IMG/VR virus record: IMGVR_UViG_3300042558_003926
Span: 225,652-289,651 of that record
DNA: 64,000 bases
Reading direction: 5' to 3' (one strand)
In this document: positions 12,758-48,298 of the stretch, piece by piece
How positions within the stretch are numbered: the first letter of the stretch is position 1
How the letters are laid out: each line of letters opens with the position of its first letter
Notes under the pieces: model-generated
The model's database searches: none
Seen by the model: only the letters and a program-made list of their open reading frames with translations
Told to the model about the DNA's origin: nothing
Position numbers and translations under genes: made by a program

Positions 12758-13630
12758 TTATATCATGCCTTTAAATCCAGCGTAAGCCTTAATGACATCC
12801 AGCTTCTTACCAAACTCTGGACTCACCCACTCGAACTCTGGTCTGTATAACAGAGCCTGATCATCTAATGGAATCTCGTTCCAGAGTGTCTCCACAGCCT
12901 GCAGGTAGCTATTCCCTTCCTTCGTGAGGGAGAATATGCTCTTGAGTGTCTCTTCAGAAACGGGGTTTTTCTCACAATAGAAACCCCCTCCAACCTTTTG
13001 TGGTGCTCCCTCCAGAGAGGTAAGTTGGTTTCTATCGCAATTGAAACTTCCACCGACCTCCTGTGGTGCTCCCTCCAGTGAGGTGAGGTTGTTGCCCTCA
13101 CAAAGGAAACGCTCTCCTACCTCCTGTGGTGCCCCCTCCAGCGAGGTGAGCTGGTTGTTGTTACAACTGAAACCTCTTCCGACCCGCTGTGGTGCTCCCT
13201 CCAGTGAGGTGAGCTGGTTGTCGCTGCAATAGAAATCATGTCCAACCCGCTGAGGTGCTCCCTCTAGGGAGATGAGCTGGTTGTCCTCACAATTGAAATT
13301 CGCTCCGACTTCCTGAGGTGCTCCCACCAGCGAGGTGAGCTGGTTGTACCTACAATAGAAATCCTCTCCAACCTTCTGTGGTGCTCCCTCTAGGGAGATG
13401 AGCTGGTTGTTGCTGCAATAGAAATACCCACTGACCACTCCAAACCTAATCCCTTTGAAATCTGTCAGGTCCTGTTCAGAGCAATTGAAATCCCCATCCA
13501 CATCAACAAGTCCGGTTTGTGGATTGATCTTCCAGGTACCATCAGTGCACTTGTCCAACCACTCGATCTGCTCTGGTGTAAGCTCTCCCACACTCTCAAA
13601 CAGTTGGCGATACGTCTTCAGATTTTTCAT
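12758..13630 (-). CDS. CTS-leader variable LRR protein (7 full repeats), first gene of the array
   Basis: GATATATAG at 13635-13643 immediately upstream. Confidence 0.9.
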   Translation of the reverse strand: MKNLKTYRQLFESVGELTPEQIEWLDKCTDGTWKINPQTGLVDVDGDFNCSEQDLTDFKGIRFGVVSGYFYCSNNQLISLEGAPQKVGEDFYCRYNQLTSLVGAPQEVGANFNCEDNQLISLEGAPQRVGHDFYCSDNQLTSLEGAPQRVGRGFSCNNNQLTSLEGAPQEVGERFLCEGNNLTSLEGAPQEVGGSFNCDRNQLTSLEGAPQKVGGGFYCEKNPVSEETLKSIFSLTKEGNSYLQAVETLWNEIPLDDQALLYRPEFEWVSPEFGKKLDVIKAYAGFKGMI

Positions 13631-13660
13631 CCCACTATATATCTCTCAATATAAGGCATC

Positions 13661-13725
13661 ATCCCGGTCTAAAAAAAAATGTGTTGGGGGCTTTTGGGAC
13701 CAAATCCCCAGGAGGGGCCCGCCCA
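13661..13725. repeat. GC-rich element upstream of left LRR array, inverted-homologous to 47377-47456
   Basis: ATCCCGGTCTAAAA and CCAGGAGGGGCCCGCC approximate reverse complements of TTTTAGACCCGGGGGATG and GGCCGGCCCTCCTGG. Confidence 0.55.
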
Positions 13726-13838
13726 CCAAATAGATGTAGTATATGTTCCGTCTCCTATAGATAGAGGTAGTGATAGATAGAGTACAGTCACACACACTAA
13801 AGAGCATGAGCACACAATCGCATATAGACAAGGTAAAC

Positions 13839-14192
13839 ATGAAACCTAATCTACTACCTTATCCACACCATGTAGCAGCACCTAAGATAGAGACAGTAGA
13901 TCTATCAGCGTTCAATACACTACAGGCACACAAGGTGAGCAAGTCACTACAGAAGAGAGCAGAGGAGATAGCTAGTGCTGTGAAATCCCTACAAGAAGAC
14001 TATGCACTCAACCTACAGCTATACTCTGCAACCAGATCATTCGAGCCTGTACTAGGAGAGGTGTATCATCTATATGAGAAGGCAGATGGCACCCAGTTCC
14101 TAAGTCTCATATCTCCCAGAGAATGGAAGCAGAAGTACCTGTATTCTGGTGTGCTAAACTCCGATGGTACCTGGACCCGAGTAGATCTGTAG
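13839..14192 (+). CDS. DUF2452-like protein
   Basis: LLPYPHHVAAPKI...FEPVLGEVYHLY...FLSLISP.EW pattern recalled for this Bacteroidota-enriched family; start moved to MKPNLL. Confidence 0.65.
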   Translation: MKPNLLPYPHHVAAPKIETVDLSAFNTLQAHKVSKSLQKRAEEIASAVKSLQEDYALNLQLYSATRSFEPVLGEVYHLYEKADGTQFLSLISPREWKQKYLYSGVLNSDGTWTRVDL

Positions 14193-14199
14193 GAGATCC

Positions 14200-14745
14200 C
14201 AGAACTGATCCCAAACTAACCCCCAACAACATAGTATGTTAGTAAGATAGTATGCACAGCCATGTTCATCTGAGTGGGAAGCACGTGGAGGCACTCATAT
14301 AGGTACTCGTATGCGAAAACTTGGCCCTCCCGGCAGCCCCTCTCCAGGGCCGAGCAACCACCCAGGGTGCGAACAAGGGTGTTCTCGGATAGCCCCGTTA
14401 GCCCGGGTTAACCACCCCCGCTTAGCCCGGGTTAACCCAGCCTCCCACTAACCCGGGGTAATTCCTGGTAAGCAATGGTAAAAACTGGAATTTTAGCCCG
14501 GGTTAACTAGGTTAACTCGGCCCGCCCCGAATCCCTAGGATTTCTCGCCCCGATTCCAGCCTCAGACACCGCGGTTATCTCTTAGGTATCTCGCCTCGCC
14601 TCACTCTACCTCTCTCTATAGGATCAGGAGACGGAATCTACTCATGTCTACTCTATCTATAGGGAGAAGGATAAGGATAATACATAACTATTTGGGGCGG
14701 GTTTCCCACGGTGTTACCCCTCAGAAAACCCCCCGAAGAATTTGG
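14200..14745. repeat. GC-rich non-coding block with TTAGCCCGGGTTAAC repeats
   Basis: Copies at 14398, 14422 and 14493; inverted repeats to 13746-13766. Confidence 0.65.
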
Positions 14746-14759
14746 ATATATAGATCACT

Positions 14760-15554
14760 ATGAAACATGTTAAAATATTTGAAGAGTATATCCCAGGAGG
14801 CAGAGCCTCTGGCAAGAGCCTAAAGGATCTCGCCAAGATCCACGGTGTAGGAATCAAGAGCCTGGAGAAGCAGCTGAAGGTTGGCGTAGCCGTTGAGATG
14901 GAACACACCAACAGTGAGGCCAAGGCCGAGGAGATAGCTATGGATCACCTAGCAGAAAACCCACGGTATTACACTCGGCTTATCCGGAAGGGATTCGTGG
15001 ATGAACCAAAGGCTCTGAAGATCTATAAGGAACTCTATGAGGGAGACTGGTTTGATAATCTAAGTTACCACCCGGCAAACCAACCAGATGGACCTGATCC
15101 AACAAGGGAGATCGAATACACCCCGGCCCAACAGAAGTTTACCACTATGTCATTCCTAGGTGATAGCAGCATTGGCTTTACTCTGCTGCATGGCAAGGAC
15201 TCCGTGGGAGGTGGAGCTTGGGTGCTTAACATCGATGAGGTTCCGGATGACTATCAGCTGATCACTGTCTATGGAGATGATGAAGAGAATGAGACGGAGA
15301 TTGATGAGGACACTTGCATCAACTACGCTACTGATCTCTGGGATGCTAGAGATAGAGATGTTGAGAATGTAGGAGAAGGCATGGAAGGCTGGGAAGATGG
15401 TAAGTTGCTATGTAAGCTAGATGCTGAACTGGCAGAGGATTTGATTGGCACTATGGAGTTCGTGATGAGAAGAGGTAATTACGGTCCTGGTTCTAATATC
15501 AAGAAAAAAGTCTCTGGTGCTGTCTATGAGCTAAGCAAACTATTTGAGCTGTGA
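14760..15554 (+). CDS. CTS-leader protein with DUF5661-like domain
   Basis: MKHVKIFEEY; GVAVEMEHT...EIAMDHLAENPRYY; GATATATAG at 14745. Confidence 0.75.
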   Translation: MKHVKIFEEYIPGGRASGKSLKDLAKIHGVGIKSLEKQLKVGVAVEMEHTNSEAKAEEIAMDHLAENPRYYTRLIRKGFVDEPKALKIYKELYEGDWFDNLSYHPANQPDGPDPTREIEYTPAQQKFTTMSFLGDSSIGFTLLHGKDSVGGGAWVLNIDEVPDDYQLITVYGDDEENETEIDEDTCINYATDLWDARDRDVENVGEGMEGWEDGKLLCKLDAELAEDLIGTMEFVMRRGNYGPGSNIKKKVSGAVYELSKLFEL

Positions 15555-15644
15555 AAGATAGTATCTTCGTAACATACTCTGTGGTCGGGCGCAAAACCTG
15601 GCCATTATTTTTTTACCCCGAGTCTAAACGTTATATTTGAAAGT

Positions 15645-15740
15645 ATGAAGAATCCAAAAGATAAAAGCGATCTAGTGATAGCACTGATAATAGCTGGATG
15701 GTTCTTGGCAATAGGTGTTGTAGCTTATCTCTTTACTTAA
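15645..15740 (+). CDS. 31-aa membrane peptide
   Basis: MKNPKDKSDLVIALIIAGWFLAIGVVAYLFT directly behind an early promoter. Confidence 0.6.
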   Translation: MKNPKDKSDLVIALIIAGWFLAIGVVAYLFT

Positions 15741-15950
15741 GAGCCATCCCGGCTCTTGCCAATAGATCATGCTATCCCAAAGAATTATAAGACTGGGGCT
15801 AAAGGTTAGACCCCTTACCACACCTCACCCACGGTGTTACCCTCTTCAACCGCTAAACACAACACCGAACTTCATAAATAGAATTCCGATATATAAAGCA
15901 TGGGAATCAAAAGATTTAAGTGCTGCAAAGAGAGCAACAGATTTGCCTTT

Positions 15951-16115
15951 ATGAAACAAGGTAAATTTCTAGTCTTTAGTTTTTTAATCATATGGCTCGG
16001 TCTCTCACTACATTTAAACGAGATTAATCCTATTGAATGGCCGAACATCTATAAGCCATTCCTCTTTCTTTTTATCTGCCCGATGTTCGCGTATCTCTCT
16101 CAAGAAAAAGTTTAG
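15951..16115 (+). CDS. small membrane protein
   Basis: MKQGKFLVFSFLIIWLGL..., two hydrophobic stretches. Confidence 0.55.
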   Translation: MKQGKFLVFSFLIIWLGLSLHLNEINPIEWPNIYKPFLFLFICPMFAYLSQEKV

Positions 16116-16175
16116 TAATTATTTTTTTTCCTGGAACCGAATGGTTATCTTTGATTTAACCAAAAAAAGAACACC

Positions 16176-16571
16176 ATGAAAATTACCTTTGAAAAGAAAG
16201 AAGCAGAAGAGATCTTCTACAGCGCATTATGCAACGGCTTAGGCTACATTGGAGGCTACGGTCTAGTCCTCGACTTCGAAGACAAGGCATACGAAAAAGC
16301 AAAGAAAACACTTAAGAAGGCCACGCCTAACGAAACTATCTGTTATGAGGACGTGCTCATGCAGATCCTCAGAGAAGGAGGAGAGCTGGTTCTGATCGAC
16401 GAGGAATGCGACGGTGAATACACCAGCCGAATCAAAATGGAAGACGTCTATGAAAGACTTCCTCTTACACCCACACGATTCTTAATGGACATGATCAACG
16501 AACAGGACGACGCTGAGACAGCAGACTGTATTATCCAGACCGTGTTCTTTAAAGATATAGTGTTTGGTTAA
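16176..16571 (+). CDS. hypothetical early protein
   Basis: Early promoter; acidic 131 aa. Confidence 0.8.
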   Translation: MKITFEKKEAEEIFYSALCNGLGYIGGYGLVLDFEDKAYEKAKKTLKKATPNETICYEDVLMQILREGGELVLIDEECDGEYTSRIKMEDVYERLPLTPTRFLMDMINEQDDAETADCIIQTVFFKDIVFG

Positions 16572-16603
16572 TCCAATATATAATTTACACCAAATCAAAT
16601 TAT

Positions 16604-16765
16604 ATGAAGACCACTAAAGATAAAACAAAGGGTAAATGGACTCAGGAATCTTTTCAAGGTAAGAGTCAAAGAAACTACGAAACTTCCGCGACCATTATTC
16701 TTTGGTGCTCAATCCTTACAGCAGTAATTTCTATCTCCGCAATTTTTTTCAAAATTTTTTTCTAA
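16604..16765 (+). CDS. 53-aa membrane protein
   Basis: Read manually; basic N-terminus, C-terminal TM helix; AATATATAA upstream. Confidence 0.55.
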   Translation: MKTTKDKTKGKWTQESFQGKSQRNYETSATIILWCSILTAVISISAIFFKIFF

Positions 16766-16864
16766 AGGGGTTTACTTTTTCCATTTTTTTCCTTATAATT
16801 AGATAAAGAAAAAATTTTTTTCCTGGAACTGAATACTTAATTTAGAATTATCAAAACAAACAAA

Positions 16865-17512
16865 ATGAAAACAATTTGCATTTACGAATTTTCTGAATTG
16901 AATCCGGAGGCTAAAGAATTAGCAATCGAATCGGTTAGAGAAGAGATGGAATCGAACGAATGGCACGAGGCTTACAACTGGGCCGTTGATGACTGTGCTC
17001 TCTTCGAACCCAAGCATGAGGAAATGGTTAAGACCTGTGGGGACAACTACTATGAGGAGAACAGAACTTCCGACGGTAAGTATGGGCAGTTCGTTTTCAA
17101 GAACCGCAGGAAGATCAAGAGCTTCGATCCGGATCCGGGAGCAACCATTATCTTAGGAGAAGCCTTAGAGATAACCAACGATCGTATGTTCAAACTCTGG
17201 TTAGGAATCCCGGAGATATTCCACGAGAGTGTTGAATATCGCATAGGGGCTTCTATCCCTGAGGACTTCATCAGATGGTCTAAGTCCACCACCATAGAAT
17301 TTGAACACAATGAATTGAATGGGGAGATCATGGGAGACGTGTTGATAGGTATCTTGGAATTGGCCAAGGAAAAGTTCGACTCACACATTTCTGATATCCA
17401 TGACAGAATCCTTACCGGGATAGATGCTTACTTCGATGACGAGAACGTAGAATACAGAATAGAAGAAAGAGAATACGAGTTTCTAGAAGACGGATCTATC
17501 TGGAATAGCTAA
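16865..17512 (+). CDS. hypothetical early protein
   Basis: Early promoter; IYEFSELNPEAKELAIE start; acidic. Confidence 0.8.
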   Translation: MKTICIYEFSELNPEAKELAIESVREEMESNEWHEAYNWAVDDCALFEPKHEEMVKTCGDNYYEENRTSDGKYGQFVFKNRRKIKSFDPDPGATIILGEALEITNDRMFKLWLGIPEIFHESVEYRIGASIPEDFIRWSKSTTIEFEHNELNGEIMGDVLIGILELAKEKFDSHISDIHDRILTGIDAYFDDENVEYRIEEREYEFLEDGSIWNS

Positions 17513-17543
17513 TTAACAAGTAAACAATTAAAATCCAAATATC

Positions 17544-17708
17544 ATGAACAAAGCAAAGAAAAACACAAGCACTCGCTCTTTAGAGCAATTAGTAGCAGAC
17601 TTCCAAGCATCTGCAGGATCATTCCTAACATTTCACGGAACGCTAAACGGAAAAGAGCGAAGCTTATTTAAAGGTTGGTTAGCAGATATGCGTCAACCCG
17701 CGGTGTAA
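17544..17708 (+). CDS. 54-aa hypothetical protein
   Basis: Read manually (MNKAKKNTSTRSLEQLV...); A-rich leader. Confidence 0.55.
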   Translation: MNKAKKNTSTRSLEQLVADFQASAGSFLTFHGTLNGKERSLFKGWLADMRQPAV

Positions 17709-17753
17709 CCCAAGACCGTCCGATACGAAATCTTTTTCCACTAGAAATCTATA

Positions 17754-18002
17754 ATGATAGATACAGAAAAGAAAGATATGGCAGCTATTAGATTTGTATG
17801 CACCACAGATAACAAGGCCAAGCACTACGATATCAAGAATCGTGCTTATCTGGCCGGCGGTGCTATCCTCAGAGAGAAAATCAGAAAAGATACCAGTTCA
17901 GAATTCGAGGGTGAGATGGAGATCGTATCGGAAGGCGGAACACTATACCGAGAGGTTAAGGAATTAGGTCTAAGTAAGACTGAAATGATAATTACACAAT
18001 AG
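17754..18002 (+). CDS. hypothetical protein
   Basis: ORF in co-directional run. Confidence 0.7.
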   Translation: MIDTEKKDMAAIRFVCTTDNKAKHYDIKNRAYLAGGAILREKIRKDTSSEFEGEMEIVSEGGTLYREVKELGLSKTEMIITQ

Positions 18003-18014
18003 GAAAGGGAAATT

Positions 18015-18380
18015 ATGTTTGATGATGAAAGAAGCGATGATCACCCGTATTTCGGAGATGATATCCACAAGAAGATCAAGACAACCCAACAGAGAATGAG
18101 AGAAGCAGCGGTGAGAGAGTTTGTTGATGGTTGTTACGCGGCATACAGTGTGCTACACGTTAGAGGGGTAGAGGCCCTCGAGGATGGAGATCCAGACGCG
18201 ATCAAAATGGCTATCAATCGCATGATGGCTCTTTTCCTACACAGGGAAGAATATGAGAGATGCTCATTTGTTAAATGGTTTGTTGAGAAACATATTCCTG
18301 ACTTTGTGATAGAACCAGATTGGAAAGTGATTGAAGATATGGAAGAAGTAAAAAGTTTATCCAATGGCACTAAGAGTTAA
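18015..18380 (+). CDS. hypothetical protein with UVR-like motif
   Basis: FLHREEYERCSFVK resembles a UvrB/C-type helix pair. Confidence 0.65.
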   Translation: MFDDERSDDHPYFGDDIHKKIKTTQQRMREAAVREFVDGCYAAYSVLHVRGVEALEDGDPDAIKMAINRMMALFLHREEYERCSFVKWFVEKHIPDFVIEPDWKVIEDMEEVKSLSNGTKS

Positions 18381-18570
18381 TAAACCGACCGGAAGGGGTA
18401 ACACTCCAAGGTCTAGTCAAACCCTTCCTTGTAAACTTTGTGGAGAGAAGGTACGTAACGTAGATAGTAAAGCGGACGCGGTAACGTGCTTCCGCTGTGT
18501 TAGTAAGATGTGCGGTGGTGGTGGAATGATAGAACCTGAAAAACCAAAGATTAAAAAATCAGATAAATAG
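18364..18570 (+). CDS. zinc-ribbon protein
   Basis: CKLC...CFRC. Confidence 0.65.
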   Translation: MALRVNKPTGRGNTPRSSQTLPCKLCGEKVRNVDSKADAVTCFRCVSKMCGGGGMIEPEKPKIKKSDK

Positions 18571-18573
18571 TAT

Positions 18574-18762
18574 ATGGATCCTAGAACAGAAGAGCTACTT
18601 CAAGATTACCGAAAGATGGTGGAGAAGACCGCAAAAAGTCTATACCTCCAAACAATAGCAGTCCGAAGAGAGTTAGAGAACAGCAAAATTAATCCAGAGG
18701 ATAAACACGAAATATTGCTACATTGTGTGGGATTACTAATCTCCAAAGAAAATAAAAAATGA
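18574..18762 (+). CDS. hypothetical protein
   Basis: Coupled ORF. Confidence 0.65.
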   Translation: MDPRTEELLQDYRKMVEKTAKSLYLQTIAVRRELENSKINPEDKHEILLHCVGLLISKENKK

Positions 18763-18965
18763 GAATGAAACCATCAGACAGAGAACTTGAACAGGACGTC
18801 ATCTTTCAAGAAATCAAAAAAGACCACGAGAAACACGGAGACATTAACCTTCCAAGGGTTAAGGGAGAACTTGAAAAGAAATCCGTTCATTTGGTTAACT
18901 CAGTGTTAGAGTCAAGGAGAGATGCTTATCTAGCCTACGTTAAGAAGTCTAGTTCTAGAGTTTAG
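18759..18965 (+). CDS. hypothetical protein
   Basis: ATGA overlap with previous gene. Confidence 0.65.
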   Translation: MRMKPSDRELEQDVIFQEIKKDHEKHGDINLPRVKGELEKKSVHLVNSVLESRRDAYLAYVKKSSSRV

Positions 18966-19202
18966 AATTCTAGAAACTCCTTCAATACACCGTGAGAGAC
19001 TCTCCGAGGTGTAACACATTCTGCTCTGAATATTTTTCTTACGTTTCGAAAGAAATGAATTGCATCAACAATATATAGAGACATAGCCCAATTTCAAAAG
19101 ATAAAAGAGCGGACACGAATTTACGGTCCGCTTTTTTTATGGTTTATTTTTTTATCCCGTGTTAGTGGATTAATTTAGTTGAGTAAATCAAAAGGGTGTA
19201 TT

Positions 19203-19820
19203 ATGGAAAATCTAAGTTTAACAATGGATACTGGTATTTATAAGATACTAGGTCAGATCAAGAAAGCCTTGATCACCTCGCTAATGCTTGGCGGGATATT
19301 TATAGTTCTAATTGGCGTGTACGCTATATTCGTTTCACTACTCATGGCAGTAGGTGTTTCAGCAGAAGGAGCAGGTTACGTTGTGGGTATGATGCCATTC
19401 ATCAACGGTGCATTCCATGCAGATTTTGGTCATCTCTTCGGAAATCTCCTTATACTATTCATCTTTCTCCTGCCAGAGGTAAACCAGGGTTATGATCTGA
19501 AGAAGCTGTTCTGGACCTCAGCAATTCTATCCACTATTTACATACCAATATTCATTCTGGGTCTATCATGGCCGGTAATTGGATCCTCTGGAGTATTCTA
19601 CTTTTTAATGGGGAGATTCATATTTAGCAGAAAGTTAGTTGTGTCTAAGATATTTGCCTATGGATTCTTTTTCCTTATTATGATGGGTGATTTGGGTATG
19701 ATGGCCTCTGACGACGGTGTAGCTCATCTCTTCCATGTGATGTGTGCAGTAATTGGAATCGTAACAGTTACGAGACTAAGTAAAAGAATTCCAGAAGGGA
19801 TACATAAGTTAATAGCATAA
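19203..19820 (+). CDS. rhomboid-family intramembrane serine protease
   Basis: Multi-TM; HADFGHLFGN, GSSG and VAHLFH motifs; start moved to ATG. Confidence 0.7.
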   Translation: MENLSLTMDTGIYKILGQIKKALITSLMLGGIFIVLIGVYAIFVSLLMAVGVSAEGAGYVVGMMPFINGAFHADFGHLFGNLLILFIFLLPEVNQGYDLKKLFWTSAILSTIYIPIFILGLSWPVIGSSGVFYFLMGRFIFSRKLVVSKIFAYGFFFLIMMGDLGMMASDDGVAHLFHVMCAVIGIVTVTRLSKRIPEGIHKLIA

Positions 19821-19836
19821 AAATAATTTTTAGAAA

Positions 19837-20175
19837 ATGATATTCTACGGTATAGCGGATGCACATGGTATAGAGAGTTTCAAACCTCAGCAGTTTGATT
19901 CAGAGGTCGAGCAATTTAATGCTGATCCCAAAGAGCTGTCGATAATGGCATTGAGAGCAAATGCTAATAGACACAGACATGCTGTTGTTTATCAAGCAGA
20001 GGTTGAAAGTCATACGGCTAAAGAGATTCTGGATCTTCTTAAAGATGGAGATTATGTTGAAGCTTTGGTGAAACTAAAGGAGGAGGCAACATCTATAAGT
20101 CTTATGAGAAGTCCAGGAGCTGAGAAGAGCTGGAATCTAATTCCAAACTCAGATCTGGATCCGTACCGAGATTAA
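19837..20175 (+). CDS. hypothetical protein
   Basis: ORF track, co-directional. Confidence 0.75.
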   Translation: MIFYGIADAHGIESFKPQQFDSEVEQFNADPKELSIMALRANANRHRHAVVYQAEVESHTAKEILDLLKDGDYVEALVKLKEEATSISLMRSPGAEKSWNLIPNSDLDPYRD

Positions 20176-20193
20176 CGTTTTAAATAATAACAT

Positions 20194-20469: not shown

Positions 20470-20473
20470 GACT

Positions 20474-40661: not shown

Positions 40662-40761
40662 GATGGGCGGAGAGCTGGAGGGAACTTATTTTCCCCTGAA
40701 TCGGATTTTCCCCGTAATAGGATGTTACTTTTGAATTATACTTATACATAAAAAGAATTAA

Positions 40762-41178: not shown

Positions 41179-41358
41179 GTTTGGTTTTTTAAATTGGTAA
41201 ATCTGGGTCAGCATACGTCCCAGATTTTTTTGTGGGAAAAGCTTGGATGTCCATGCAGAACACCGTTGGTAAACTTTTTTCAATTTTATCCCGGGTTAAT
41301 TTTTTTTCCCGGTTAAGATCCCTTACTTTTATATCATAACCAATTAAAACAAAACAAA

Positions 41359-41502
41359 ATGAAAACAGCAGGAAAAATCGCAACAGTTACTTTGCAAGTT
41401 TGGTCAGCAGCATTAGCTTTAACTTTAGTAGTAGCAATCGTATTTGCAATCGTTCAGGTTGTGACAGGCAACTACCACGGTACTGCATCTAGAGAATTCT
41501 AA
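41359..41502 (+). CDS. 47-aa membrane peptide
   Basis: Read manually behind an early promoter. Confidence 0.65.
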   Translation: MKTAGKIATVTLQVWSAALALTLVVAIVFAIVQVVTGNYHGTASREF

Positions 41503-41576
41503 AGCAAAAACATTTTCTTGAATCAATCTGAGAGCCTGGTCCACACCAGGCTTTTTTGTGTCCATAGGTTTCCCAT

Positions 41577-41620
41577 AGGTTTTCAGAGGTTTTCAGAGGT
41601 TTTCAGAGGTTTTCAGATGT
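41577..41620. repeat. 10-nt tandem repeat (GGTTTTCAGA)x4
   Basis: Seen between a terminator and a palindrome. Confidence 0.8.
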
Positions 41621-41632
41621 TACAGCTGGATT

Positions 41633-41649
41633 CACCGTCGGCAACGGTG
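41633..41649. repeat. CACC-N9-GGTG palindrome
   Basis: CACCGTCG-G-CAACGGTG. Confidence 0.8.
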
Positions 41650-41656
41650 TTACCAG

Positions 41657-41920
41657 TTATAGCATAGGATTCGATGTTGCAGAATCAGGAACTCTGATGA
41701 TGATTGAATCTCCAAATCGGTCAACACCAAATCCAGTTGGAGATAGATTTCTGTAATAATCTAGGTAATAATCTGTACGATCAAAGCCCTCGGTGTTCTC
41801 ACTCTCTCTTACGCAATTAGGAACTATACGTCCATTCTTTTTCTTAGTACCAATCTGCTTGTATCCTTTCCAACAAGGATTGGCTTTTTCTTTTAGAAAA
41901 TCTGAATAAGTTAGAATCAT
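41657..41920 (-). CDS. CTS-leader protein, antisense island
   Basis: MILTYSDFLKE; NPCWKGYKQIGTKKKNGRIVPNCV motif; AATATATAG upstream. Confidence 0.8.
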   Translation of the reverse strand: MILTYSDFLKEKANPCWKGYKQIGTKKKNGRIVPNCVRESENTEGFDRTDYYLDYYRNLSPTGFGVDRFGDSIIIRVPDSATSNPML

Positions 41921-42020
41921 GCTCTATATATTTACCCCGGCCGAAAATAATCACGGGTTAATTTTTTTTCCCGGGCTAGATGGATTATATTTACTTCATA
42001 ACCAATTAAAACAAAAAACC

Positions 42021-42197
42021 ATGAAAACATTAGCTTTCAGAATCAATCTAGTTATTGCAACACTTTGCATGTTAGTATCAGCAGCAGGTTTCTTTGGAGC
42101 AATCCTAACCGGTCATCTGTTTCAAGGAGTCTTTTTTGGATTTCTCACGGTGATTGCCATAGGCATACTTAAACTCACTATAGAAGAATCCGCATAA
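42021..42197 (+). CDS. two-TM membrane protein
   Basis: Start moved to MKTLAF behind the early promoter. Confidence 0.7.
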   Translation: MKTLAFRINLVIATLCMLVSAAGFFGAILTGHLFQGVFFGFLTVIAIGILKLTIEESA

Positions 42198-42319
42198 AAA
42201 ATTAGGTTAGGTTGGTTAAGTGAGTAAGAAGTCCCGGAGCAATCTGGGACTTTTTTGTGGTGTGTGGATATGCAGCATCCGATCAGATCTGCACATTCAC
42301 CTCGGTCAACGGTGAAAGG

Positions 42320-42532
42320 ATGTTGAATCTTGTAGAGTTATATACAATAAAAAGAGAAGCTATGAGAAAGAAAGGATTAAAACTCAGAAACTCATGGGGC
42401 AGAGGTTTGCAATGGGACAAACTTCACATTTACCTCAGAGTTGGCCCGTTGGTACTATTCCAACTAGACACTGACTGGTCAAACCGCCGGTTTACATTAG
42501 CTGTACTGAACTTTAAGATCACTAATAAGTAG
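42320..42532 (+). CDS. basic hypothetical protein
   Basis: ORF followed by terminator; start uncertain. Confidence 0.5.
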   Translation: MLNLVELYTIKREAMRKKGLKLRNSWGRGLQWDKLHIYLRVGPLVLFQLDTDWSNRRFTLAVLNFKITNK

Positions 42533-42628
42533 AGATATGGTTTAGTAAGAGAAAGCTCCTTATGGAGCTTTTTTTGTCCGAGGTGTTTCCCATTTAAAAT
42601 GATATATATAAAAAAATAAAAAACTCAC

Positions 42629-42910
42629 ATGAACGCGAACATTCTTGAATTTGATGATTTCTCTAATGAATCGATTATGCCTAGACCTGATGGAAGAAAA
42701 GTACCTGCACCACACTTTCCGCTAACACCCGAGGAGAAAGTGGTGATAGATGATTTTAAGGCAGAAGTTGAAAGAGCTCTTGTACAGGAGATTGTTAGGC
42801 CAAACTTTGGAGCCAACAAATACAGTTCTAGACCTAAGACACTAAAAGAGCTGATTGAAGATTTACAATCAGTAATAACAGATTTTGCTCCGAAAGCTAA
42901 ATCAAGATAA
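42629..42910 (+). CDS. CTS-like-leader protein
   Basis: NILEFDDFSNES; GATATATA upstream. Confidence 0.75.
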   Translation: MNANILEFDDFSNESIMPRPDGRKVPAPHFPLTPEEKVVIDDFKAEVERALVQEIVRPNFGANKYSSRPKTLKELIEDLQSVITDFAPKAKSR

Positions 42911-43020
42911 TCACATTGCAGCACATGCATTACACCGAGGGCTAGAAAAAATCTAGTCCTTTATTTTTTTTCCTGGACATGAATACTTATATTTACTTAT
43001 AACCAATTAAACAAATCATT

Positions 43021-43119
43021 ATGTCAAAGCAAACAAAAAAGGGAAAGAAATCAATTAAATCTGCAAACATTCAGGCTCAGGAATGGGATAACGATTCTTG
43101 GGCAACTCAGAGAGGATAA
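43021..43119 (+). CDS. 32-aa peptide
   Basis: Read manually behind the last early promoter; terminator follows. Confidence 0.5.
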   Translation: MSKQTKKGKKSIKSANIQAQEWDNDSWATQRG

Positions 43120-43379
43120 GTTTGGAGTCAGATCCCAAGCAGGCGAAGAACCGGGGTAGTGCCCGGTTTTTTTTGTGGACCAGGTTTTCCTATGGGAAGA
43201 ATAGATTCAACACCGCTGGCCGAGGTGAATTGAGGGAGGCATCCAAGGGTCCCAAAAGGACCCCAGATGGGATCCAGATAGGACCAGGAGAGCTCATGAG
43301 ATTCACCCCGGCCAATTCATCCACGGTGAAAAAGAAGATAGCTATGGGAATCCAGGAAATCTTCTTCTTTCACATCCCG

Positions 43380-43720
43380 GGGTGTTACTCATAAGCAAGC
43401 ATAAAAACTTTAAGCTTGCTTCTTGTCTTCTTAGATGTACCCGCGGTGAAACTCTTATAGTTCTGCGAAAAGCTATGCTTTCTGCTTTCTCTAAAAAAAG
43501 GCCCCCTTGCCCATATGGTGGAGGGGGGTAAAATTAGGGTCCTCTCTATAGGGTACTAGGCCCCCTCGTATACAGGGCCTTTTTAGGGGGTGGGGAAGGC
43601 TAAGGGGAAGGGTCCCTTATTTAGGGGTCCCCAGAAAGAGTCTAATTAGGGGTCCCTCAGCAGGGTCCATTTGAGGGGGCCTCGTATACAGGGAGAAGCA
43701 GCCCGTGCAAAACGCTGAGG
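43380..43720. repeat. GC/G-rich non-coding block
   Basis: TTAGGG(G) units, CCTCGTATACAGGG direct repeat (43564, 43680), G-quadruplex-type run 43586-43612. Confidence 0.6.
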
Positions 43721-43784
43721 ACCGAGTTCTATTAAATGAGCTTCCATGACAACAAGCTCCATCCAGTCAACCGATATATAGCAC

Positions 43785-44414
43785 ATGAAACACATAAAAG
43801 GATTTGGATTGTTTGAAGCAGTTATCATGCCATCCAAGATAGAAGATGATGCTCCTGTGAATTCTTTTGAATCAGCGGTAGAGTTCGGTCGGAGAAATGG
43901 ATTTGAAGTTGTTGACTATGACGAGTTCTATAACTCTCTAGGAGAAGCAGATAAGAGAACTGCACCACCAAGAAGAGGCACGCCTTTCTTTGCTCTCTTC
44001 CATCCCATCAGAAAAATCCCTATGTTTGTTCTTGCTGATCCGAATGCTACAAGGATCATTCCCAACTTCAAAGAGATCATGCTAGATATCATCGGTCATG
44101 AGATGGTACACTCGGAGCAATTAAGAAGAAGAGGAGGTATAGAATTTGCTCTTCCAGATCCTTTAGATAAAAAAGCTTACTTCTCCAACAAGGAGGAGAT
44201 CATGGCATTCTCGTTCACTATCGCCAATGATCTAGCTAAAACACAAAGCAATCCAGAGGAGGCCATGAAAGAATTGGATAGGGTAACTCCATTCTCGCCA
44301 AGAGGTCCACAGTATAAGATGGTCTGGGATTCTATTAGAAGAAACTGTGACGAAAAGACAATCAGAAAATACCGTAAGTACATCTACATGTATTTGACCA
44401 AAATGCTGAACTAG
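43785..44414 (+). CDS. CTS-leader protein with zincin-like HExxH motif
   Basis: MKHIKGFGLFEA; IGHEMVHSEQ...KEEIMAFS. Confidence 0.7.
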   Translation: MKHIKGFGLFEAVIMPSKIEDDAPVNSFESAVEFGRRNGFEVVDYDEFYNSLGEADKRTAPPRRGTPFFALFHPIRKIPMFVLADPNATRIIPNFKEIMLDIIGHEMVHSEQLRRRGGIEFALPDPLDKKAYFSNKEEIMAFSFTIANDLAKTQSNPEEAMKELDRVTPFSPRGPQYKMVWDSIRRNCDEKTIRKYRKYIYMYLTKMLN

Positions 44415-44438
44415 AGAAGAAAGAAAATATATACATTC

Positions 44439-45992
44439 ATGGAAAGGATAAAACTATTTGAAGCATTCGAGGGAAGATCTCCAGAGATTAGATCTTATCT
44501 GAATATGTTCGGTTCTCTAAGCGAGAACATAGCAGCTGCAAAGTCATTCATGCAGAGGGAGTACGCAAAGAAAAAGAAAATAGATCCCAAGGATCTAACT
44601 CCGGAAGAAAGAGAGCAGGCTTTAGATAATAGAGGCTACAAGGAGATACTGAAGCTCATTGGGGACAAGCACGGATACGCATCTGCATTTGTCAAGTTTC
44701 ACTTTGAGCAGGGTGTGCCTATTAATCTTCCGGGTAGAGCAGATGGGGATGGAGAGATTAGAGATCTCGCCTCTCTATTCAATCTGATGATCACCAAGAA
44801 ACACGTGGTGTCCAGAATACCTATGAATATCGATCAGTATGCTGCATCCGATGAGATAAACGGGGTTAGTGGATTTGAGGCTCTAACTGATGCTATCAGA
44901 ACCATAGAGAGAGCCGATGGTGCTAAATGGTTTACGGATAGACTACCTAAGAAATCAAGAGATGGCTTCAGAAGCATGTCCCCCGAGGACAAGAACAGGG
45001 TGATCAATGCAGCTTATGCTCTAGAGGATCTCGGAAAGGAGGTCACCGAGAGATTGCTTTCCAAGATTAAAGCCATGGATTCTTGGACTATAGATCAGGT
45101 GATGGATTACACCAACAACTACCTCTCTGGATACAGTAATCTTGAGATGAAGAAGAAAATGGACGAGATAGCAGAGCTAGAACCAGGTGCTGGTGTACTC
45201 TACTTTGATGACAAGTATCTAGCTATTACGGTTAGAACAGATAAGGCTCAAAGAGCTCTTTGCTCCATAGCTAACTGGTGCATTAACCGTGGATCCTTTA
45301 ACAACTATGCAGGAGAAGGAAGCCGAGGAAAGGGAATCCAGGTCAACATCTTCGATTACACCAAAGATCCCACAGATCCATATTTCCTAACAGGCACAAC
45401 AATCAGCAATGACGGTAGAGTTACTGACTCTCACGACATCAACGACAGAAGCATCAAAAAAGGTACAGAACCAGGAGTTCATTTTAAAGGTCTAGGTTAT
45501 CCTCAGGACATGGTGGATGATCTAGTAAAAGGTATTCCCATAGAGATAGCAACCAAGAAGATTCTAGATTCTTTAGGTACAGCCAATGCACTGGAGATGA
45601 TTAAGAACCTTATCCAATTAAGAAAGGGATTGATCGCTGGAAGAGTGTCTGATGACATCTGGGGAAAAGCACTTCAGATCTCTTCGGATATAATCAAGGA
45701 AGATTCAGATATAAAGGTAAGCACTATAATACAGCGTTTCAAAGAAAGCGGTATTGTAACCGAGAATGGTCTCGTGGTCTTTAAAGCTCTGGCTGGTGAC
45801 GCCTACACAAGAGAGGATGCTAAAGCCATTATCGAGATGAGCGAGAGAAACTTTAACAATATGGTGTACCTTTTAGAGCTTTATGATGAAGGACTCATAT
45901 CTAATAAAAGTAGTGACATCAATCAAGATGCCATTAGAGAAACCATTAAAAACAAAGACGAAGTGCTAGCTAAGCTGAAAGAGGAGCTATAG
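44439..45992 (+). CDS. large CTS-leader protein
   Basis: MERIKLFEAF; internal ALCSIANWCI motif seen in large-phage proteins. Confidence 0.8.
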   Translation: MERIKLFEAFEGRSPEIRSYLNMFGSLSENIAAAKSFMQREYAKKKKIDPKDLTPEEREQALDNRGYKEILKLIGDKHGYASAFVKFHFEQGVPINLPGRADGDGEIRDLASLFNLMITKKHVVSRIPMNIDQYAASDEINGVSGFEALTDAIRTIERADGAKWFTDRLPKKSRDGFRSMSPEDKNRVINAAYALEDLGKEVTERLLSKIKAMDSWTIDQVMDYTNNYLSGYSNLEMKKKMDEIAELEPGAGVLYFDDKYLAITVRTDKAQRALCSIANWCINRGSFNNYAGEGSRGKGIQVNIFDYTKDPTDPYFLTGTTISNDGRVTDSHDINDRSIKKGTEPGVHFKGLGYPQDMVDDLVKGIPIEIATKKILDSLGTANALEMIKNLIQLRKGLIAGRVSDDIWGKALQISSDIIKEDSDIKVSTIIQRFKESGIVTENGLVVFKALAGDAYTREDAKAIIEMSERNFNNMVYLLELYDEGLISNKSSDINQDAIRETIKNKDEVLAKLKEEL

Positions 45993-46042
45993 AATCTCAG
46001 AAACTTTTCGTCGTTTGAGTGTATAAAGGTTAAACCCTGTTC

Positions 46043-46249
46043 ATGACAAAGTCCCGTATTAGATTTCATAGATTCTTCACCTTCATGTTGATGTTAATCA
46101 TGCTCATCATCCTGGTAGACACACTGCCTCAGATGATCATGTATGGCATCGCAGGTTGGCAACTAGGGGCCTGGGGCAATCTTCTGTATGCTCGGCTAAT
46201 GGAGATAACAGTGGATCCCTATGATGAGTCTAAGGGAGTGGATGAGTAG
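46043..46249 (+). CDS. small membrane protein
   Basis: Hydrophobic N-terminal half. Confidence 0.65.
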   Translation: MTKSRIRFHRFFTFMLMLIMLIILVDTLPQMIMYGIAGWQLGAWGNLLYARLMEITVDPYDESKGVDE

Positions 46250-46300
46250 GATCGGATTATGTTCCGTCTCTCGTGATACATAAGATAAAATAGATAAGCT

Positions 46301-46504
46301 ATGACAGATTCAAATTCAAATCCAGGTAATCCTTTCTCTTTCATGGTGACTTTGCTTTTTGCTTTGATCGCTTATGTCAGCATCATGTTAATGTCTTCTT
46401 GTAAGTCTTCCAAGACACACTGTGATGCCTATGGAGATCTTAAGAGACAGCATGATGCGTATCACGGTAAAGAAGTGACTGTGGTTAAAGAAGTAACCAA
46501 ATAG
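46301..46504 (+). CDS. small lipoprotein-like protein
   Basis: TM helix then SSCKSSKTHCDAY. Confidence 0.65.
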   Translation: MTDSNSNPGNPFSFMVTLLFALIAYVSIMLMSSCKSSKTHCDAYGDLKRQHDAYHGKEVTVVKEVTK

Positions 46505-46506
46505 GC

Positions 46507-46731
46507 ATGGGAGATCACAGACACACCACTACCCAATGCACCTCAGTGCCTGTGAGCACCCCGCATGGAGACGGAGAGCTACAGGCTCTTTACATATCTG
46601 AGCTTGGCTTCCTGATGGCCAAGGTCTACTTCAAAGAGACTGGGGTCTGGACCACATGGAATCTCGGACCTCATGACATTCGTAAATCACCACTCTCTAA
46701 GGCTATCCACGATCAGGAGTGGGTTTTATAA
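46507..46731 (+). CDS. hypothetical protein
   Basis: ORF track. Confidence 0.65.
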   Translation: MGDHRHTTTQCTSVPVSTPHGDGELQALYISELGFLMAKVYFKETGVWTTWNLGPHDIRKSPLSKAIHDQEWVL

Positions 46732-46740
46732 TACACCTCT

Positions 46741-46872
46741 ATGCTACGTAAACTCTGGAGAACTATAGACAGAAAAGTGATGGATACATCTGACTACACC
46801 TTAGCTATGCTTTTGATAGGTTTGGTTATAGGTACATTTGCTGCTCTCTGTCTACTAACTCTTCTACCATAA
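46741..46872 (+). CDS. 43-aa membrane peptide
   Basis: Read manually; C-terminal TM helix. Confidence 0.45.
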   Translation: MLRKLWRTIDRKVMDTSDYTLAMLLIGLVIGTFAALCLLTLLP

Positions 46873-46885
46873 CAATATATAGTTT

Positions 46886-47278
46886 ATGAAACATCTTAGA
46901 AGATTTAATGAGAGCGCAAACACAAACCTAGAGGAGATTACTCCAGGTAGATTTGTGTATCACTTGTCTGCACCAGTATACAGAGACCAGATAGAAAGAA
47001 TCGGGTTACTTCCTAAAAGAGGGGAACAGTGGTTAACCAATACTCCAATTGAGGGAGAAGCTATATTTGCAACTGATAGTGATAACGAGGAAGATTGGTA
47101 CGATTCCTCTTATGATGACGATGTTTATGAGATAGACACGGATAAAATTAGTAATAAGTGGTACGTGGATCCTAATTTCCAAGTTCAAGACTACTCCAAA
47201 CACATAGTTACCTTTGATAAAATACCTTCATCTGCAATCTCTCTAATACATAGAGGAACTGGGGATTCTAAATACTAG
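46886..47278 (+). CDS. CTS-leader ADP-ribosyltransferase-fold protein
   Basis: MKHLRRFNES; FVYHLS...IERIGLLP...AIFAT. Confidence 0.6.
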   Translation: MKHLRRFNESANTNLEEITPGRFVYHLSAPVYRDQIERIGLLPKRGEQWLTNTPIEGEAIFATDSDNEEDWYDSSYDDDVYEIDTDKISNKWYVDPNFQVQDYSKHIVTFDKIPSSAISLIHRGTGDSKY

Positions 47279-47287
47279 ACTATACCC

Positions 47288-47350
47288 ACTTTGCATATTT
47301 AGACGGTTTCACTTTGCATATTTAGACCGTTTTGCTACTCACTTTTAGAC
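47288..47350. repeat. 22-nt direct repeats, iteron-like
   Basis: CACTTTGCATATTTAGAC(G/C)GTTT x2 plus a partial third copy. Confidence 0.65.
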
Positions 47351-47554
47351 TCATATAACATAGACATATCCCTGGAGGCCGGCCCTCCTGGAGCACCCAC
47401 CCCAAATTTTGGCCCCCGGCCAAATCTGGAACCCCCAGTTTTAGACCCGGGGGATGCAGGTCCTTTCTATGGGGGACCCAAACCGCGTTTTCACGCACGC
47501 GAAAGGACGGAGAGTACGGGGATGATGGCGGGATATATAGACGAGGATATGCCT

Positions 47555-48298
47555 ATGAAGAATCTAAAGACCTATAAGATGTTTGAGAGTGTGGGTGAGC
47601 TTACACCGGAGCAGATCGAGTGGCTTGATGAGTGCACTGATGGTACCTGGACACTCAATCCACAAACAGGACTGGTTGATGTGAAGAGGGATTTCTATTG
47701 TACTGGAGAGAACCTGACAGATTTCAAAGGAGTTAGGTTTGGGGTGGTCGAAGGAGATTTCAATTGCCATAACAATCAGCTCACCACACTGGAGGGAGCA
47801 CCTCATGAGGTTGGTGGAAATTTCGATTGCGACAACAATCAGCTCACCACACTGGAGGGAGCACCGCGGAAGGTTGGAGATATTTTCGGTTGTAGAGGAA
47901 ACCAGCTCACCTCACTGGTGGGAGCACCTCATGAGGTTGGTAGTGATTTCTATTGCCATAACAATCAGCTCACCACACTGGAGGGAGCACCACAACGGGT
48001 TGGAAGGAATTTCAGATGTGACAACAACCAGCTCACTTCTCTAGTGGGAGCACCACAGGATGTTGAAGGGGATTTCTATTGTGGGGACAACCCAGTTTCT
48101 GAAGAGACACTCGATAACATATTCTACCGCATGACGGAAGGAGAGAGTTATATCAAGGCTGTAGAGTCTCTCTGGAGCAAGATTCCGTTAGAAGATCAGG
48201 TGCTGCTATACAGACCTGAGTTTGAGTGGGTAAGTCCAGAGGAGAGAAGAAAGCTGGAAGCGTTAAAGGCTTACCATGGATTTAAAGGTATGATATAA
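47555..48298 (+). CDS. CTS-leader variable LRR protein (5 full repeats)
   Basis: Start moved to MKNLKTY; GATATATAG at 47532; caps nearly identical to the left array. Confidence 0.9.
   Translation: MKNLKTYKMFESVGELTPEQIEWLDECTDGTWTLNPQTGLVDVKRDFYCTGENLTDFKGVRFGVVEGDFNCHNNQLTTLEGAPHEVGGNFDCDNNQLTTLEGAPRKVGDIFGCRGNQLTSLVGAPHEVGSDFYCHNNQLTTLEGAPQRVGRNFRCDNNQLTSLVGAPQDVEGDFYCGDNPVSEETLDNIFYRMTEGESYIKAVESLWSKIPLEDQVLLYRPEFEWVSPEERRKLEALKAYHGFKGMI

What the first reader, a model, noticed from the sequence alone, without database searches (positions are those of the whole stretch)
12758..48298. Two LRR clusters in inverted orientation with homologous GC-rich upstream elements flank a 34-kb segment
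Seen: the left array reads leftward from 13630 and a right pair reads rightward from 47555, with long near-identical cap and scaffold DNA. Their upstream regions share GGC(C/G)GGCCC(C)TCCTGG and TTTTAGACC(C)GGG(GG)ATG (13661-13723 versus 47377-47456). Inference: crossover between inverted LRR copies would invert the whole early region and create chimeric LRRs, or one cluster donates modules to the other by gene conversion.
Basis: partly seen in the sequence, partly recalled or inferred. Interest (0 to 1): 0.68.

Follow-up and report, generated by a model that had tools for sequence, protein, structure and literature searches.

The report
Inverted LRR gene clusters, fixed orientation
Two groups of related leucine-rich-repeat genes really do face away from each other across a 34-kb block in a 290-kb freshwater T4-like phage, but every long public assembly shows one fixed orientation, so this is an ordinary expanding gene family that swaps short patches between copies, not a flipping switch.

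Summary
The geometry is real. Six tandem LRR genes lie on the minus strand (8773-13630). Two lie on the plus strand (47555-49045) and an older member at 52632-53528. The first gene of each cluster follows a homologous non-coding leader found nowhere else in the 289,651-bp genome. "Near-identical" is overstated: the arms are 74-85% identical and the longest exact inverted match is 45 nt.

Inversion is not supported. The genome has no serine or tyrosine recombinase and no reverse transcriptase. About 40 public contigs, two of which (60 and 98 kb) span both clusters, show the reference order, as do two relatives. Three contigs of 2.1 kb or less join a right-cluster 5' part to a left-cluster 3' part inside the 45-nt or 39-nt identical tracts. 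One of them hops twice, a fourth contig joins direct repeats, and the reciprocal junction was never found. These are probably assembly mis-joins.

Historical patch exchange between clusters is supported: one gene of each cluster shares a unique 39-nt tract (p<=0.0005).

Both leaders end in an ATATATA gene-start motif shared with tail-sheath and head-protease genes. The proteins start with a disordered leader resembling the T4 capsid-targeting sequence, so they may be head-packaged, injected binding proteins. That is inferred, not shown.

The parts
8773..13630 (-). Left array of six tandem LRR genes, spaced 0-4 nt apart: A6 8773-9447, A5 9450-10505, A4 10507-11193, A3 11198-12010, A2 12011-12757, A1 12758-13630. 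They carry 4-10 units of 63 nt.
13631..13760 (-). Non-coding leader of the left array. It has a GC-rich core (GGCCCCTCCTGG), TTTTAGACCGGG, and GATATATAG 4 nt before the A1 start codon.
   Evidence: An orthologous copy exists in the relative G001.
13770..47278 (+). Intervening block, mostly small plus-strand genes. Each has its own hairpin/T-run, TTAnnTTT(G) and TAACCAATTAAA cassette. The block also holds CHAP, SLT and a RecA-like ATPase.
   Evidence: (D3, D5, D7-D9)
47287..47554 (+). Non-coding leader of the right pair. It has two direct repeats of CACTTTGCATATTTAGAC, the GC-rich core, TTTTAGACCCGGG, a 55-nt insert relative to the A1 leader, and GGGATATATAG.
   Evidence: It is 93% identical in relative L058, against 75-82% for the flanking genes.
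47555..49045 (+). Right pair of LRR genes: B1 47555-48298 and B2 48299-49045, five units each. They abut exactly as the A genes do.
   Evidence: (38-nt identical gene-gene junction)
52632..53528 (+). B3, an older diverged LRR paralogue. Its orthologue sits inside the main array of the relative G001.
10747..10791 (-). The 45-nt tract in A4 that is exactly identical to 48014-48058 in B1. It is the switch point of hybrid contig L013.
48014..48058 (+). The 45-nt tract in B1, partner of 10747-10791.
11013..11051 (-). The 39-nt tract in A4 that is identical to 48438-48476 in B2 and encodes FGCSRMDLPDFK, unique to these two genes. It marks a historical exchange and is the switch point of hybrid contigs L056 and L057.
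48438..48476 (+). The 39-nt tract in B2, partner of 11013-11051.

Best explanation
The two clusters belong to one phage-specific family of short-repeat (21-residue) LRR proteins in a 290-kb T4-like jumbo phage from lake water. The left array grew by tandem duplication. The right pair is an old, fixed, inverted copy of the head of such an array, taken together with its non-coding leader and the abutting gene-gene junction.

Both leaders end in the phage's ATATATA gene-start motif, which also precedes virion morphogenesis genes. The two clusters are therefore probably late transcription units that read outward from the intervening block (inferred).

The family diversifies in two ways: by gain and loss of 63-nt units, and by short patchy exchange between paralogues, including between the two clusters (shown by sequence patterns). 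The 34-kb block does not flip as a switch. One orientation is fixed in the population and in relatives (shown within the limits of assemblies).

Each protein is a protein-binding solenoid behind a disordered 12-14-residue leader, MKNLKTYxxxFE. The leader resembles the T4 capsid-targeting sequence that is cut after Glu by the head protease. The proteins may therefore be packed into the head and delivered with the DNA (inferred, about one chance in three).
For: Family and anatomy. The window is the last 64 kb of a 289,651-bp virus record with a gp23-type capsid protein and a gp21-type protease.

Single orientation. Contig Ga0453726_0000149 (60 kb) spans from left of the window to about 51.7 kb, and ENA contig k141_2025564 (98 kb) spans from 12429 past the window's end. 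Both are collinear at 99.8-100%. The exact B1 protein is in 23 contigs and the exact A4 protein in 11. Relative G001 is collinear across left flank, array, block and right flank. Relative L058 keeps the right pair in the same place and direction, with different unit numbers: 313, 250 and 258 aa.

No Resolvase, Phage_integrase or RVT_1 match in the genome.

Mosaic tracts. A runs test on polymorphic sites gave p<=0.0005 for A4-B2, A2-A3, B1-B2 and A2-A5, and the A4/B2 tract has unique shared states. N-cap and C-cap trees are incongruent.

Leaders. They are unique in the genome, and the B1 leader is 93% conserved against 75-82% for its coding flanks.

ATATATA motif. 53 of 88 ATATATA[GAC] sites lie 0-40 nt upstream of a same-strand start, against 6.6% for shuffled 8-mers and 2 of 37 for the reverse complement. 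The genes so marked include tail sheath, head maturation protease, A1, B3 and many genes with the MKxIKxFE-type start; B1 carries the motif 16 nt before its start.

The leader peptide. Residues 1-14 have pLDDT below 50 in a model with mean pLDDT 91.6. F11 and E12 are invariant in 25 homologues. The T4 capsid-targeting sequence is MKTYQEFIAE and is cut once (PMC8442874); the T4 protease cuts after Glu (PMC5694885).
Against: Assemblies report the majority form and break at repeats, so a minority inverted form cannot be excluded. The one reads call gave only Logan contigs shattered into 100-260-nt pieces across the arrays. Three short contigs do carry the predicted right-5'/left-3' junctions. Many of the JGI samples look like one lake series, so they are not fully independent. 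Late timing and head packaging rest on motif resemblance alone; there are no expression or virion data. The ATATATA motif could be a translation-start feature rather than a promoter. The runs test does not model local differences in constraint.
Confidence: 0.75

Rival explanations
1. Rare homologous recombination between the inverted paralogues, at the 45-nt A4/B1 or 39-nt A4/B2 identical tracts, really occurs in the lake population. It would invert about 37 kb and create chimeric LRR genes at low frequency, without any dedicated enzyme.
For: Three contigs from three samples and two assembly sources join a right-cluster 5' part to the A4 3' part with 100% identity on both sides: L013 (JGI 3300013004), L056 (ENA ERZ27271753) and L057 (JGI 3300035190). 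The switch lies exactly in the two longest identical tracts. The phage carries a RecA-like ATPase. Historical exchange between the same genes is evident.
Against: All hybrids are in contigs of 1.1-2.1 kb. L057 hops a second time, from A5 to A1 at a 47-nt shared stretch, and L041 joins A5 to A2 at a 30-nt shared stretch, as graph mis-joins do. The reciprocal junction gave 0 hits in 241 million metagenome records and in IMG/VR, while the positive control was found. No reciprocal hybrid protein appears in the 90% clusters. The hybrid protein is in 1 contig against 23 for intact B1.
Confidence: 0.2
2. The hybrid contigs are assembly chimeras. De Bruijn graph paths were joined wrongly through exact repeats of 30-47 nt shared by the paralogues.
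For: Every switch point lies in one of the longest exact shared stretches. There are multi-hop and direct-repeat hybrids in equally short contigs. There is no reciprocal product. Logan unitigs shatter throughout the arrays.
Against: Two hybrids of the same kind arose in independent assemblies. Some come from assemblers whose final k exceeds the tract length, which would normally need spanning reads.
Confidence: 0.65
3. A programmed invertible segment, as in Mu G or P1 C, or a shufflon or DGR-type diversifier, that switches LRR variants.
For: Only the geometry: inverted related genes at the borders of a segment.
Against: The genome has no serine invertase, tyrosine recombinase or reverse transcriptase. 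There are no short conserved crossover sites. Every gene is complete with its own start and stop. Only one orientation is seen.
Confidence: 0.02
4. An expression site with silent donor cassettes, as in vlsE or pilE/pilS, or lamprey VLR-like assembly. One cluster would be expressed and the other would only donate modules.
For: Patchy inter-cluster tracts exist.
Against: All nine genes are full-length open frames with conserved N- and C-caps. Both clusters carry the same leader and gene-start motif. The population is nearly clonal, at 99.6-100% identity across samples, with no variable expression site.
Confidence: 0.03

Closest known systems
Phage T4 internal proteins (IPI, IPII, IPIII, Alt) with the capsid-targeting sequence
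   Same: The phage has a T4-type head module, with a gp23-like capsid protein and a gp21-like protease. A family of otherwise diverse proteins shares a short N-terminal leader ending in Glu, MKNLKTYxxxFE against MKTYQEFIAE in T4. The leader is disordered in the model. In T4 such proteins are a diverse, fast-evolving set of injected anti-defence proteins that share only the targeting sequence (PMC3012670).
   Different: The cargo here is an LRR solenoid with helical caps, not the small basic T4 internal proteins. There are about 30 genes with this leader. Packaging and cleavage are untested. The similarity covers about 10 residues only.
LRR domains of IpaH/SspH-type (LPX class) bacterial proteins
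   Same: Short repeats of 20-21 residues. These are the best PDB fold matches, to the SspH1 and IpaH LRR domains. The asparagine ladder and LxxL core are kept.
   Different: The matches are weak (E about 0.01, TM 0.33-0.41, 20-26% identity). The repeat has a conserved Cys and a GAPxxV motif. There is no E3 ligase domain. The caps are different. The family is viral in all Atlas clusters. Pfam LRR_4 scores below its cut-off, 25.8 against 27 bits.
Invertible segments of phages Mu (G/Gin) and P1 (C/Cin)
   Same: Related sequences in inverted orientation border a DNA segment in a phage genome.
   Different: There is no invertase, no short crossover sites and no split gene whose 3' end is exchanged. 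Only one orientation is seen, and the segment is 34 kb holding dozens of genes.
Expanded repeat-protein gene families of large viruses, such as ankyrin, FNIP or LRR families in giant viruses (from general knowledge)
   Same: Tandem and dispersed paralogues, lineage-specific expansion, variable repeat number and recombination among copies.
   Different: The host here is bacterial, the repeat class is different, and the copies share an N-terminal leader and a conserved non-coding leader.

Membership tests
Site-specific invertible segment (Hin/Gin/Cin type) | A serine invertase gene in or beside the segment | tested here: not met
   PF00239 found no match in the whole 289,651-bp genome, while the control genomes matched.
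Site-specific invertible segment (Hin/Gin/Cin type) | Short, near-identical inverted crossover sites at the borders | tested here: not met
   The arms are whole diverged genes, 74-83% complementary. The longest exact match is 45 nt and lies inside coding repeats.
Site-specific invertible segment (Hin/Gin/Cin type) | Both orientations present in a population | tested here: not met
   All long contigs are in the reference order. The only hybrids are in contigs of 2.1 kb or less and lack the reciprocal product. Raw reads were not available.
Shufflon | An Rci-type tyrosine recombinase | tested here: not met
   PF00589 found no match in the genome.
Diversity-generating retroelement | A reverse transcriptase with a template/variable repeat pair | tested here: not met
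   PF00078 found no match in the genome.
Expression-site/silent-cassette gene conversion system | One promoter-linked expression copy plus truncated, promoterless donors | tested here: not met
   All nine copies are complete ORFs. Both clusters carry the same leader and the ATATATA motif.
Leucine-rich repeat superfamily | Tandem LxxLxLxxN-type units that form a beta-strand solenoid | tested here: met
   There are 4-10 units of 21 residues. The AF2 model has mean pLDDT 91.6 with one short strand per unit. The top PDB folds are LRR domains. Pfam LRR_4 is just under its cut-off.
LPX (IpaH/SspH/YopM) LRR subclass | The 20-residue LPX consensus and close fold similarity | tested here: inconclusive
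   These are the best matches but are weak (E about 0.01, TM 0.33-0.41). The unit is 21 residues with a different consensus.
T4-type capsid-targeted internal proteins | A gp21-family prohead protease in the genome | tested here: met
   Peptidase_S77 scored 34.2 bits, over its cut-off. PHROG head maturation protease matched at E 9.5e-39.
T4-type capsid-targeted internal proteins | An N-terminal leader of about 10 residues, resembling MKTYQEFIAE and ending in Glu | tested here: inconclusive
   MKNLKTYxxxFE is present in all LRR genes and about 20 other ORFs. F11 and E12 are invariant. The leader is disordered. The resemblance is short and was not scored statistically.
T4-type capsid-targeted internal proteins | Presence in the virion and cleavage of the leader | not testable with these tools
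   This needs virion mass spectrometry.

The most novel reading that the evidence does not exclude
The LRR arrays encode a diversifying repertoire of head-packaged, injected binding proteins. They would be tagged by a T4-like capsid-targeting leader and expressed late from a conserved dedicated leader. New variants would arise by recombination among paralogues, including rare crossovers between the inverted clusters that also flip about 37 kb of the genome. This phage-only family has thousands of unnamed relatives in aquatic metagenomes, so the reading would define a large class of injected phage effectors.
Probability: 0.15. Interest if true: 0.7.

Novelty: new member of a known kind. Interest (0 to 1): 0.38.

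Why it matters
As an inversion switch the finding does not hold, so the headline claim loses most of its interest. Three things remain useful.

First, this is a clear case of a repeat-protein gene family in a jumbo phage evolving by unit gain and loss and by patch exchange between dispersed copies.

Second, it is a caution: short metagenomic contigs can carry hybrid LRR genes exactly at shared 30-47-nt tracts and so mimic recombination.

Third, it gives a testable lead. A very large, wholly unannotated, phage-only LRR family (more than 6,400 relatives; viral in all Atlas clusters) carries a T4-like capsid-targeting leader and sits behind a late-type gene-start motif. That would make its members candidates for proteins delivered into the host with the DNA.

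Tried and rejected
- Megablast of 12000-16000 against the GenBank phage collection found no match.
- The one reads call returned only Logan contigs. The arrays are broken into 100-260-nt pieces and long contigs start at 13557, so it could not judge orientation. Its 'joints' and loose ends trace to paralogous junctions lying outside the laid stretch.
- The reciprocal junction pattern (A4 5' flank, 45 nt, B1 3' flank) gave 0 hits in metagenome contigs and in viral contigs. The control pattern found only the known hybrid contig.
- RNA folding of the leaders gave z-scores between -0.14 and +0.93, so there is no sign of a stable structure. Rfam and tRNA scans of the window found nothing. The sigma-70 and terminator consensus scans at both leaders found nothing useful.
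- The equal-length ORF pairs 1688-3385/59523-61220 (565 aa) and 4246-5649/62372-63775 (467 aa) looked like a larger inverted symmetry. They are unrelated.
- A leader-core pattern search in IMG/VR found only the known relative, plus a chance hit inside a coding region of a GC-rich phage.
- The 45-nt A4/B1 identity is not claimed as a conversion tract. It overlaps the most conserved 33 nt of the repeat unit, so a run of that length is not clearly beyond expectation.
- Only the bacterial genetic code was used.
Full report
**What the window is.** The window is the last 64 kb (225652-289651) of a 289,651-bp virus record, classed as linear and estimated complete. The genome has a gp23-type major capsid protein and a gp21-type (Peptidase_S77) head protease, so its head module is T4-like. 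Near-identical sequence is held by at least 24 lake-water metagenome runs. One ENA contig runs about 46 kb past the window's end, so the record's end is not a physical end.

**The observation.** I label the genes A1-A6 and B1-B3.
- Six LRR genes lie head to tail on the minus strand, with 0-4 nt between them: A1 12758-13630, A2 12011-12757, A3 11198-12010, A4 10507-11193, A5 9450-10505, A6 8773-9447.
- Two lie on the plus strand and abut: B1 47555-48298 and B2 48299-49045.
- A more diverged member, B3, is at 52632-53528 on the plus strand.
- Each protein has four parts. These are a leader MKNLKTYxxxFE, an N-cap of about 60 residues, 4-10 units of 21 residues (NQLTSLEGAPQxVGxxFxCxx), and a 69-residue helical C-cap.

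The two leaders also share GATATATAG just before the start codon, and the B1 leader has a 55-nt insert.

"Near-identical" is too strong. The arms are 74-83% complementary. B1 is 76-85% identical to the A genes in the caps, and B2 only 53-72%. The longest exact inverted matches are 45, 39 and 38 nt. The best pair of 63-nt units shares 58 of 63 positions.

**Does the block invert?**
- No enzyme. No serine recombinase, tyrosine recombinase or reverse transcriptase is encoded anywhere in the genome.
- Public assemblies.
  - About 40 contigs were read that carry the genes just inside each cluster.
  - Every contig longer than about 2.3 kb is collinear with the window at 99.6-100%.
  - JGI contig Ga0453726_0000149 (60 kb) and ENA contig k141_2025564 (98 kb) each cross LRR genes of the left array, the whole block and the right pair in the reference order.
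  - The exact B1 protein is on 23 contigs and the exact A4 protein on 11.
- Distant relative. In the 348-kb relative G001, left flank, LRR array, block and right flank are collinear with this genome. G001 has no LRR pair at the right border, and the B3 orthologue sits in its main array.
- Nearer relative. L058 (75-88% nt identity) has the right pair in the same place and direction.

So the orientation is stable over long divergence, and the right-hand pair is absent from the distant relative but already present in the nearer one.

**The exceptions.**
- L013 (2,059 bp) equals 46602-48058 and then 10791 down to 10145, both at 100%. The switch is inside the 45-nt tract.
- L056 (1,159 bp) equals 48234-48476 and then 11051 down to 10097. 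The switch is inside the 39-nt tract.
- L057 (1,104 bp) switches the same way, then hops again from A5 to A1 at a 47-nt shared stretch.
- L041 joins A5 to A2, which are direct repeats, at a 30-nt shared stretch.
- Other short contigs encode a B1 start on a B2 body, an A1 body with an A3/A4 tail, and an A2 lacking one unit.
- The reciprocal junction (A4 5' part with a right-cluster 3' part) was not found in 241 million metagenome records or in IMG/VR, although the control pattern retrieved L013. It was also absent from the 90% protein clusters.

The contigs are short, every switch lies in one of the longest shared words, there are multiple hops and direct-repeat hops, and the reciprocal is missing. 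This points to assembly mis-joins. Rare true recombinants cannot be excluded without raw reads, and the one reads call returned only shattered Logan contigs.

**Exchange between copies in the past.**
- A4 and B2 share 39 identical bases encoding FGCSRMDLPDFK, with states found in none of the other six paralogues, although B2 is otherwise the most diverged of the eight A and B1-B2 genes compared.
- A runs test on polymorphic sites gave p<=0.0005 for A4-B2, and also for A2-A3, B1-B2 and A2-A5. That is 0 of 2000 permutations, across 56 pair tests.
- N-cap and C-cap types are combined differently in different genes.
- B2 orthologues in related strains start with an A2-like leader, whereas here the first 62 nt of B2 are 98% identical to B1.
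- Units do not cluster by locus.
- Unit numbers differ between strains: B1 is 258 aa here and 313 aa in L058, and B3 is 298 aa against 258 aa.

**The leaders.**
- The A1 leader has an orthologue in G001, in front of a truncated LRR remnant.
- The B1 leader (47287-47554) is 93% identical in L058, while the neighbouring genes are 75-82% identical. The gene to its left (46886-47278) is absent there. The leader is therefore a constrained non-coding element that travels with the cluster.
- It shows no unusual RNA stability and no Rfam match.
- Its last part, ATATATAG, belongs to a genome-wide motif.
  - 53 of 88 ATATATA[GAC] sites lie 0-40 nt upstream of a same-strand gene start, against 6.6% for shuffled words and 2 of 37 for the reverse complement.
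  - The genes so marked include tail sheath, head maturation protease and a tail lysin. They also include A1, B3 and most genes with the MKxIKxFE-type start. B1 carries the motif 16 nt before its start.
  - I take the motif as a late-promoter candidate, by analogy with the T4 late promoter TATAAATA (my own knowledge).
- By contrast, about 20 small genes inside the block carry a different cassette: a hairpin, a T-run, TTAnnTTT(G) and TAACCAATTAAA. This cassette is almost confined to window positions 25-45 kb. From my own knowledge it resembles Bacteroidota housekeeping promoters, so host-polymerase (early) transcription is plausible.

**What the proteins may do.**
- The AF2 model of A2 is confident (mean pLDDT 91.6) except for residues 1-14.
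- The best solved folds are the LRR domains of SspH1 and IpaH proteins, but only weakly.
- The family has more than 6,400 relatives, all unnamed, and is viral in every Atlas cluster returned.
- About 30 ORFs, nearly all between 210 and 283 kb of the genome, begin M[KRE]x[ILV]Kx[FY]..FE.
- The T4 capsid-targeting sequence is MKTYQEFIAE and is removed by a single cut (PMC8442874). The T4 protease cuts after Glu (PMC5694885). T4 internal proteins are a diverse set of injected anti-defence proteins that share only that sequence (PMC3012670).
- Three features together make head packaging a reasonable, untested hypothesis: a T4-type protease, a late-type motif, and a conserved but disordered leader with invariant Phe-Glu.

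**Verdict.** The inversion reading is not supported. The gene-conversion reading is supported as history. The feature is an ordinary expanding paralogue family, with an interesting lead about its leader peptide and its conserved non-coding leader.

Noticed in passing
window 16118-43026 (for example 28387-28449, 30264-30326, 41944-42027): About 20 copies of a 60-84-nt cassette stand in front of small plus-strand genes. The cassette is a hairpin, a T-run, TTAnnTTT(G), TAACCAATTAAA and then the ATG. 21 of the 27 genome-wide TAACCAATTAAA sites fall in genome positions 250-270 kb on the plus strand. It looks like a Bacteroidota-type host promoter with a leader, which would mark an early gene block.
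   Followed up: partly
whole genome; in the window for example 13642, 14746, 43774, 46875, 47533, 50485, 52605: An ATATATA[GAC] motif lies 0-40 nt upstream of 56 gene starts and is strand-specific. The genes include tail sheath and head maturation protease. It is a candidate late promoter.
   Followed up: partly
window 272-1366, 5666-6118, 8249-8710, 14760-15554, 43785-45992, 46886-47278, 50507-52591, 55259-56927 and genome 210-226 kb: About 30 otherwise unrelated ORFs begin with M[KRE]x[ILV]Kx[FY]..FE, resembling the T4 capsid-targeting sequence MKTYQEFIAE. The relatives L001 and L002 show the same starts.
   Followed up: partly
window 47287-47345: Two direct repeats of CACTTTGCATATTTAGAC(G/C)GTTT plus a third partial copy sit at the left edge of the B1 leader. 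They are unique in the genome and conserved in relative L058, and may be protein-binding sites.
   Followed up: partly
window 28944-29034, 35856-35946, 36412-36502, 37166-37256: Four copies of a 91-nt repeat contain the palindrome CACCGTCGCC(A/G)ACGGTG. They lie at the ends of small genes just before promoter cassettes. Their function is unknown.
   Followed up: no
window 46886-47278 and 49074-50476: The 130-aa gene left of the B1 leader, and the glycosyltransferase and metallophosphatase genes right of B2, are absent from the nearer relative L058. The borders of the right cluster are therefore indel hot spots.
   Followed up: partly
L022 19420-19630 (G001 99420-99630): In the 348-kb relative, the position equivalent to A1 holds only a truncated LRR N-cap remnant behind the conserved leader.
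   Followed up: partly
window 64000 (end of the record): ENA contig k141_2025564 continues about 46 kb beyond the window's end, and some family proteins sit on a 337,724-bp contig. The 289,651-bp record end is an assembly break, not a genome end.
   Followed up: no
window 9830-10324, 10761-11117, 47739-48044: Long off-frame ORFs with SSPHWREH repeats inside the LRR genes are by-products of the 63-nt periodicity, not genes.
   Followed up: partly
window 25379-26389 and 54137-55039: A RecA/KaiC-like ATPase that scores below the Pfam RecA cut-off lies inside the block. A sigma-70-family factor is encoded to the right of the right cluster.
   Followed up: partly
window 8000-14000: The LRR array is 47-49% G+C in a genome of about 36-41% G+C. 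This is probably driven by the Gly/Ala/Pro-rich repeat.
   Followed up: no
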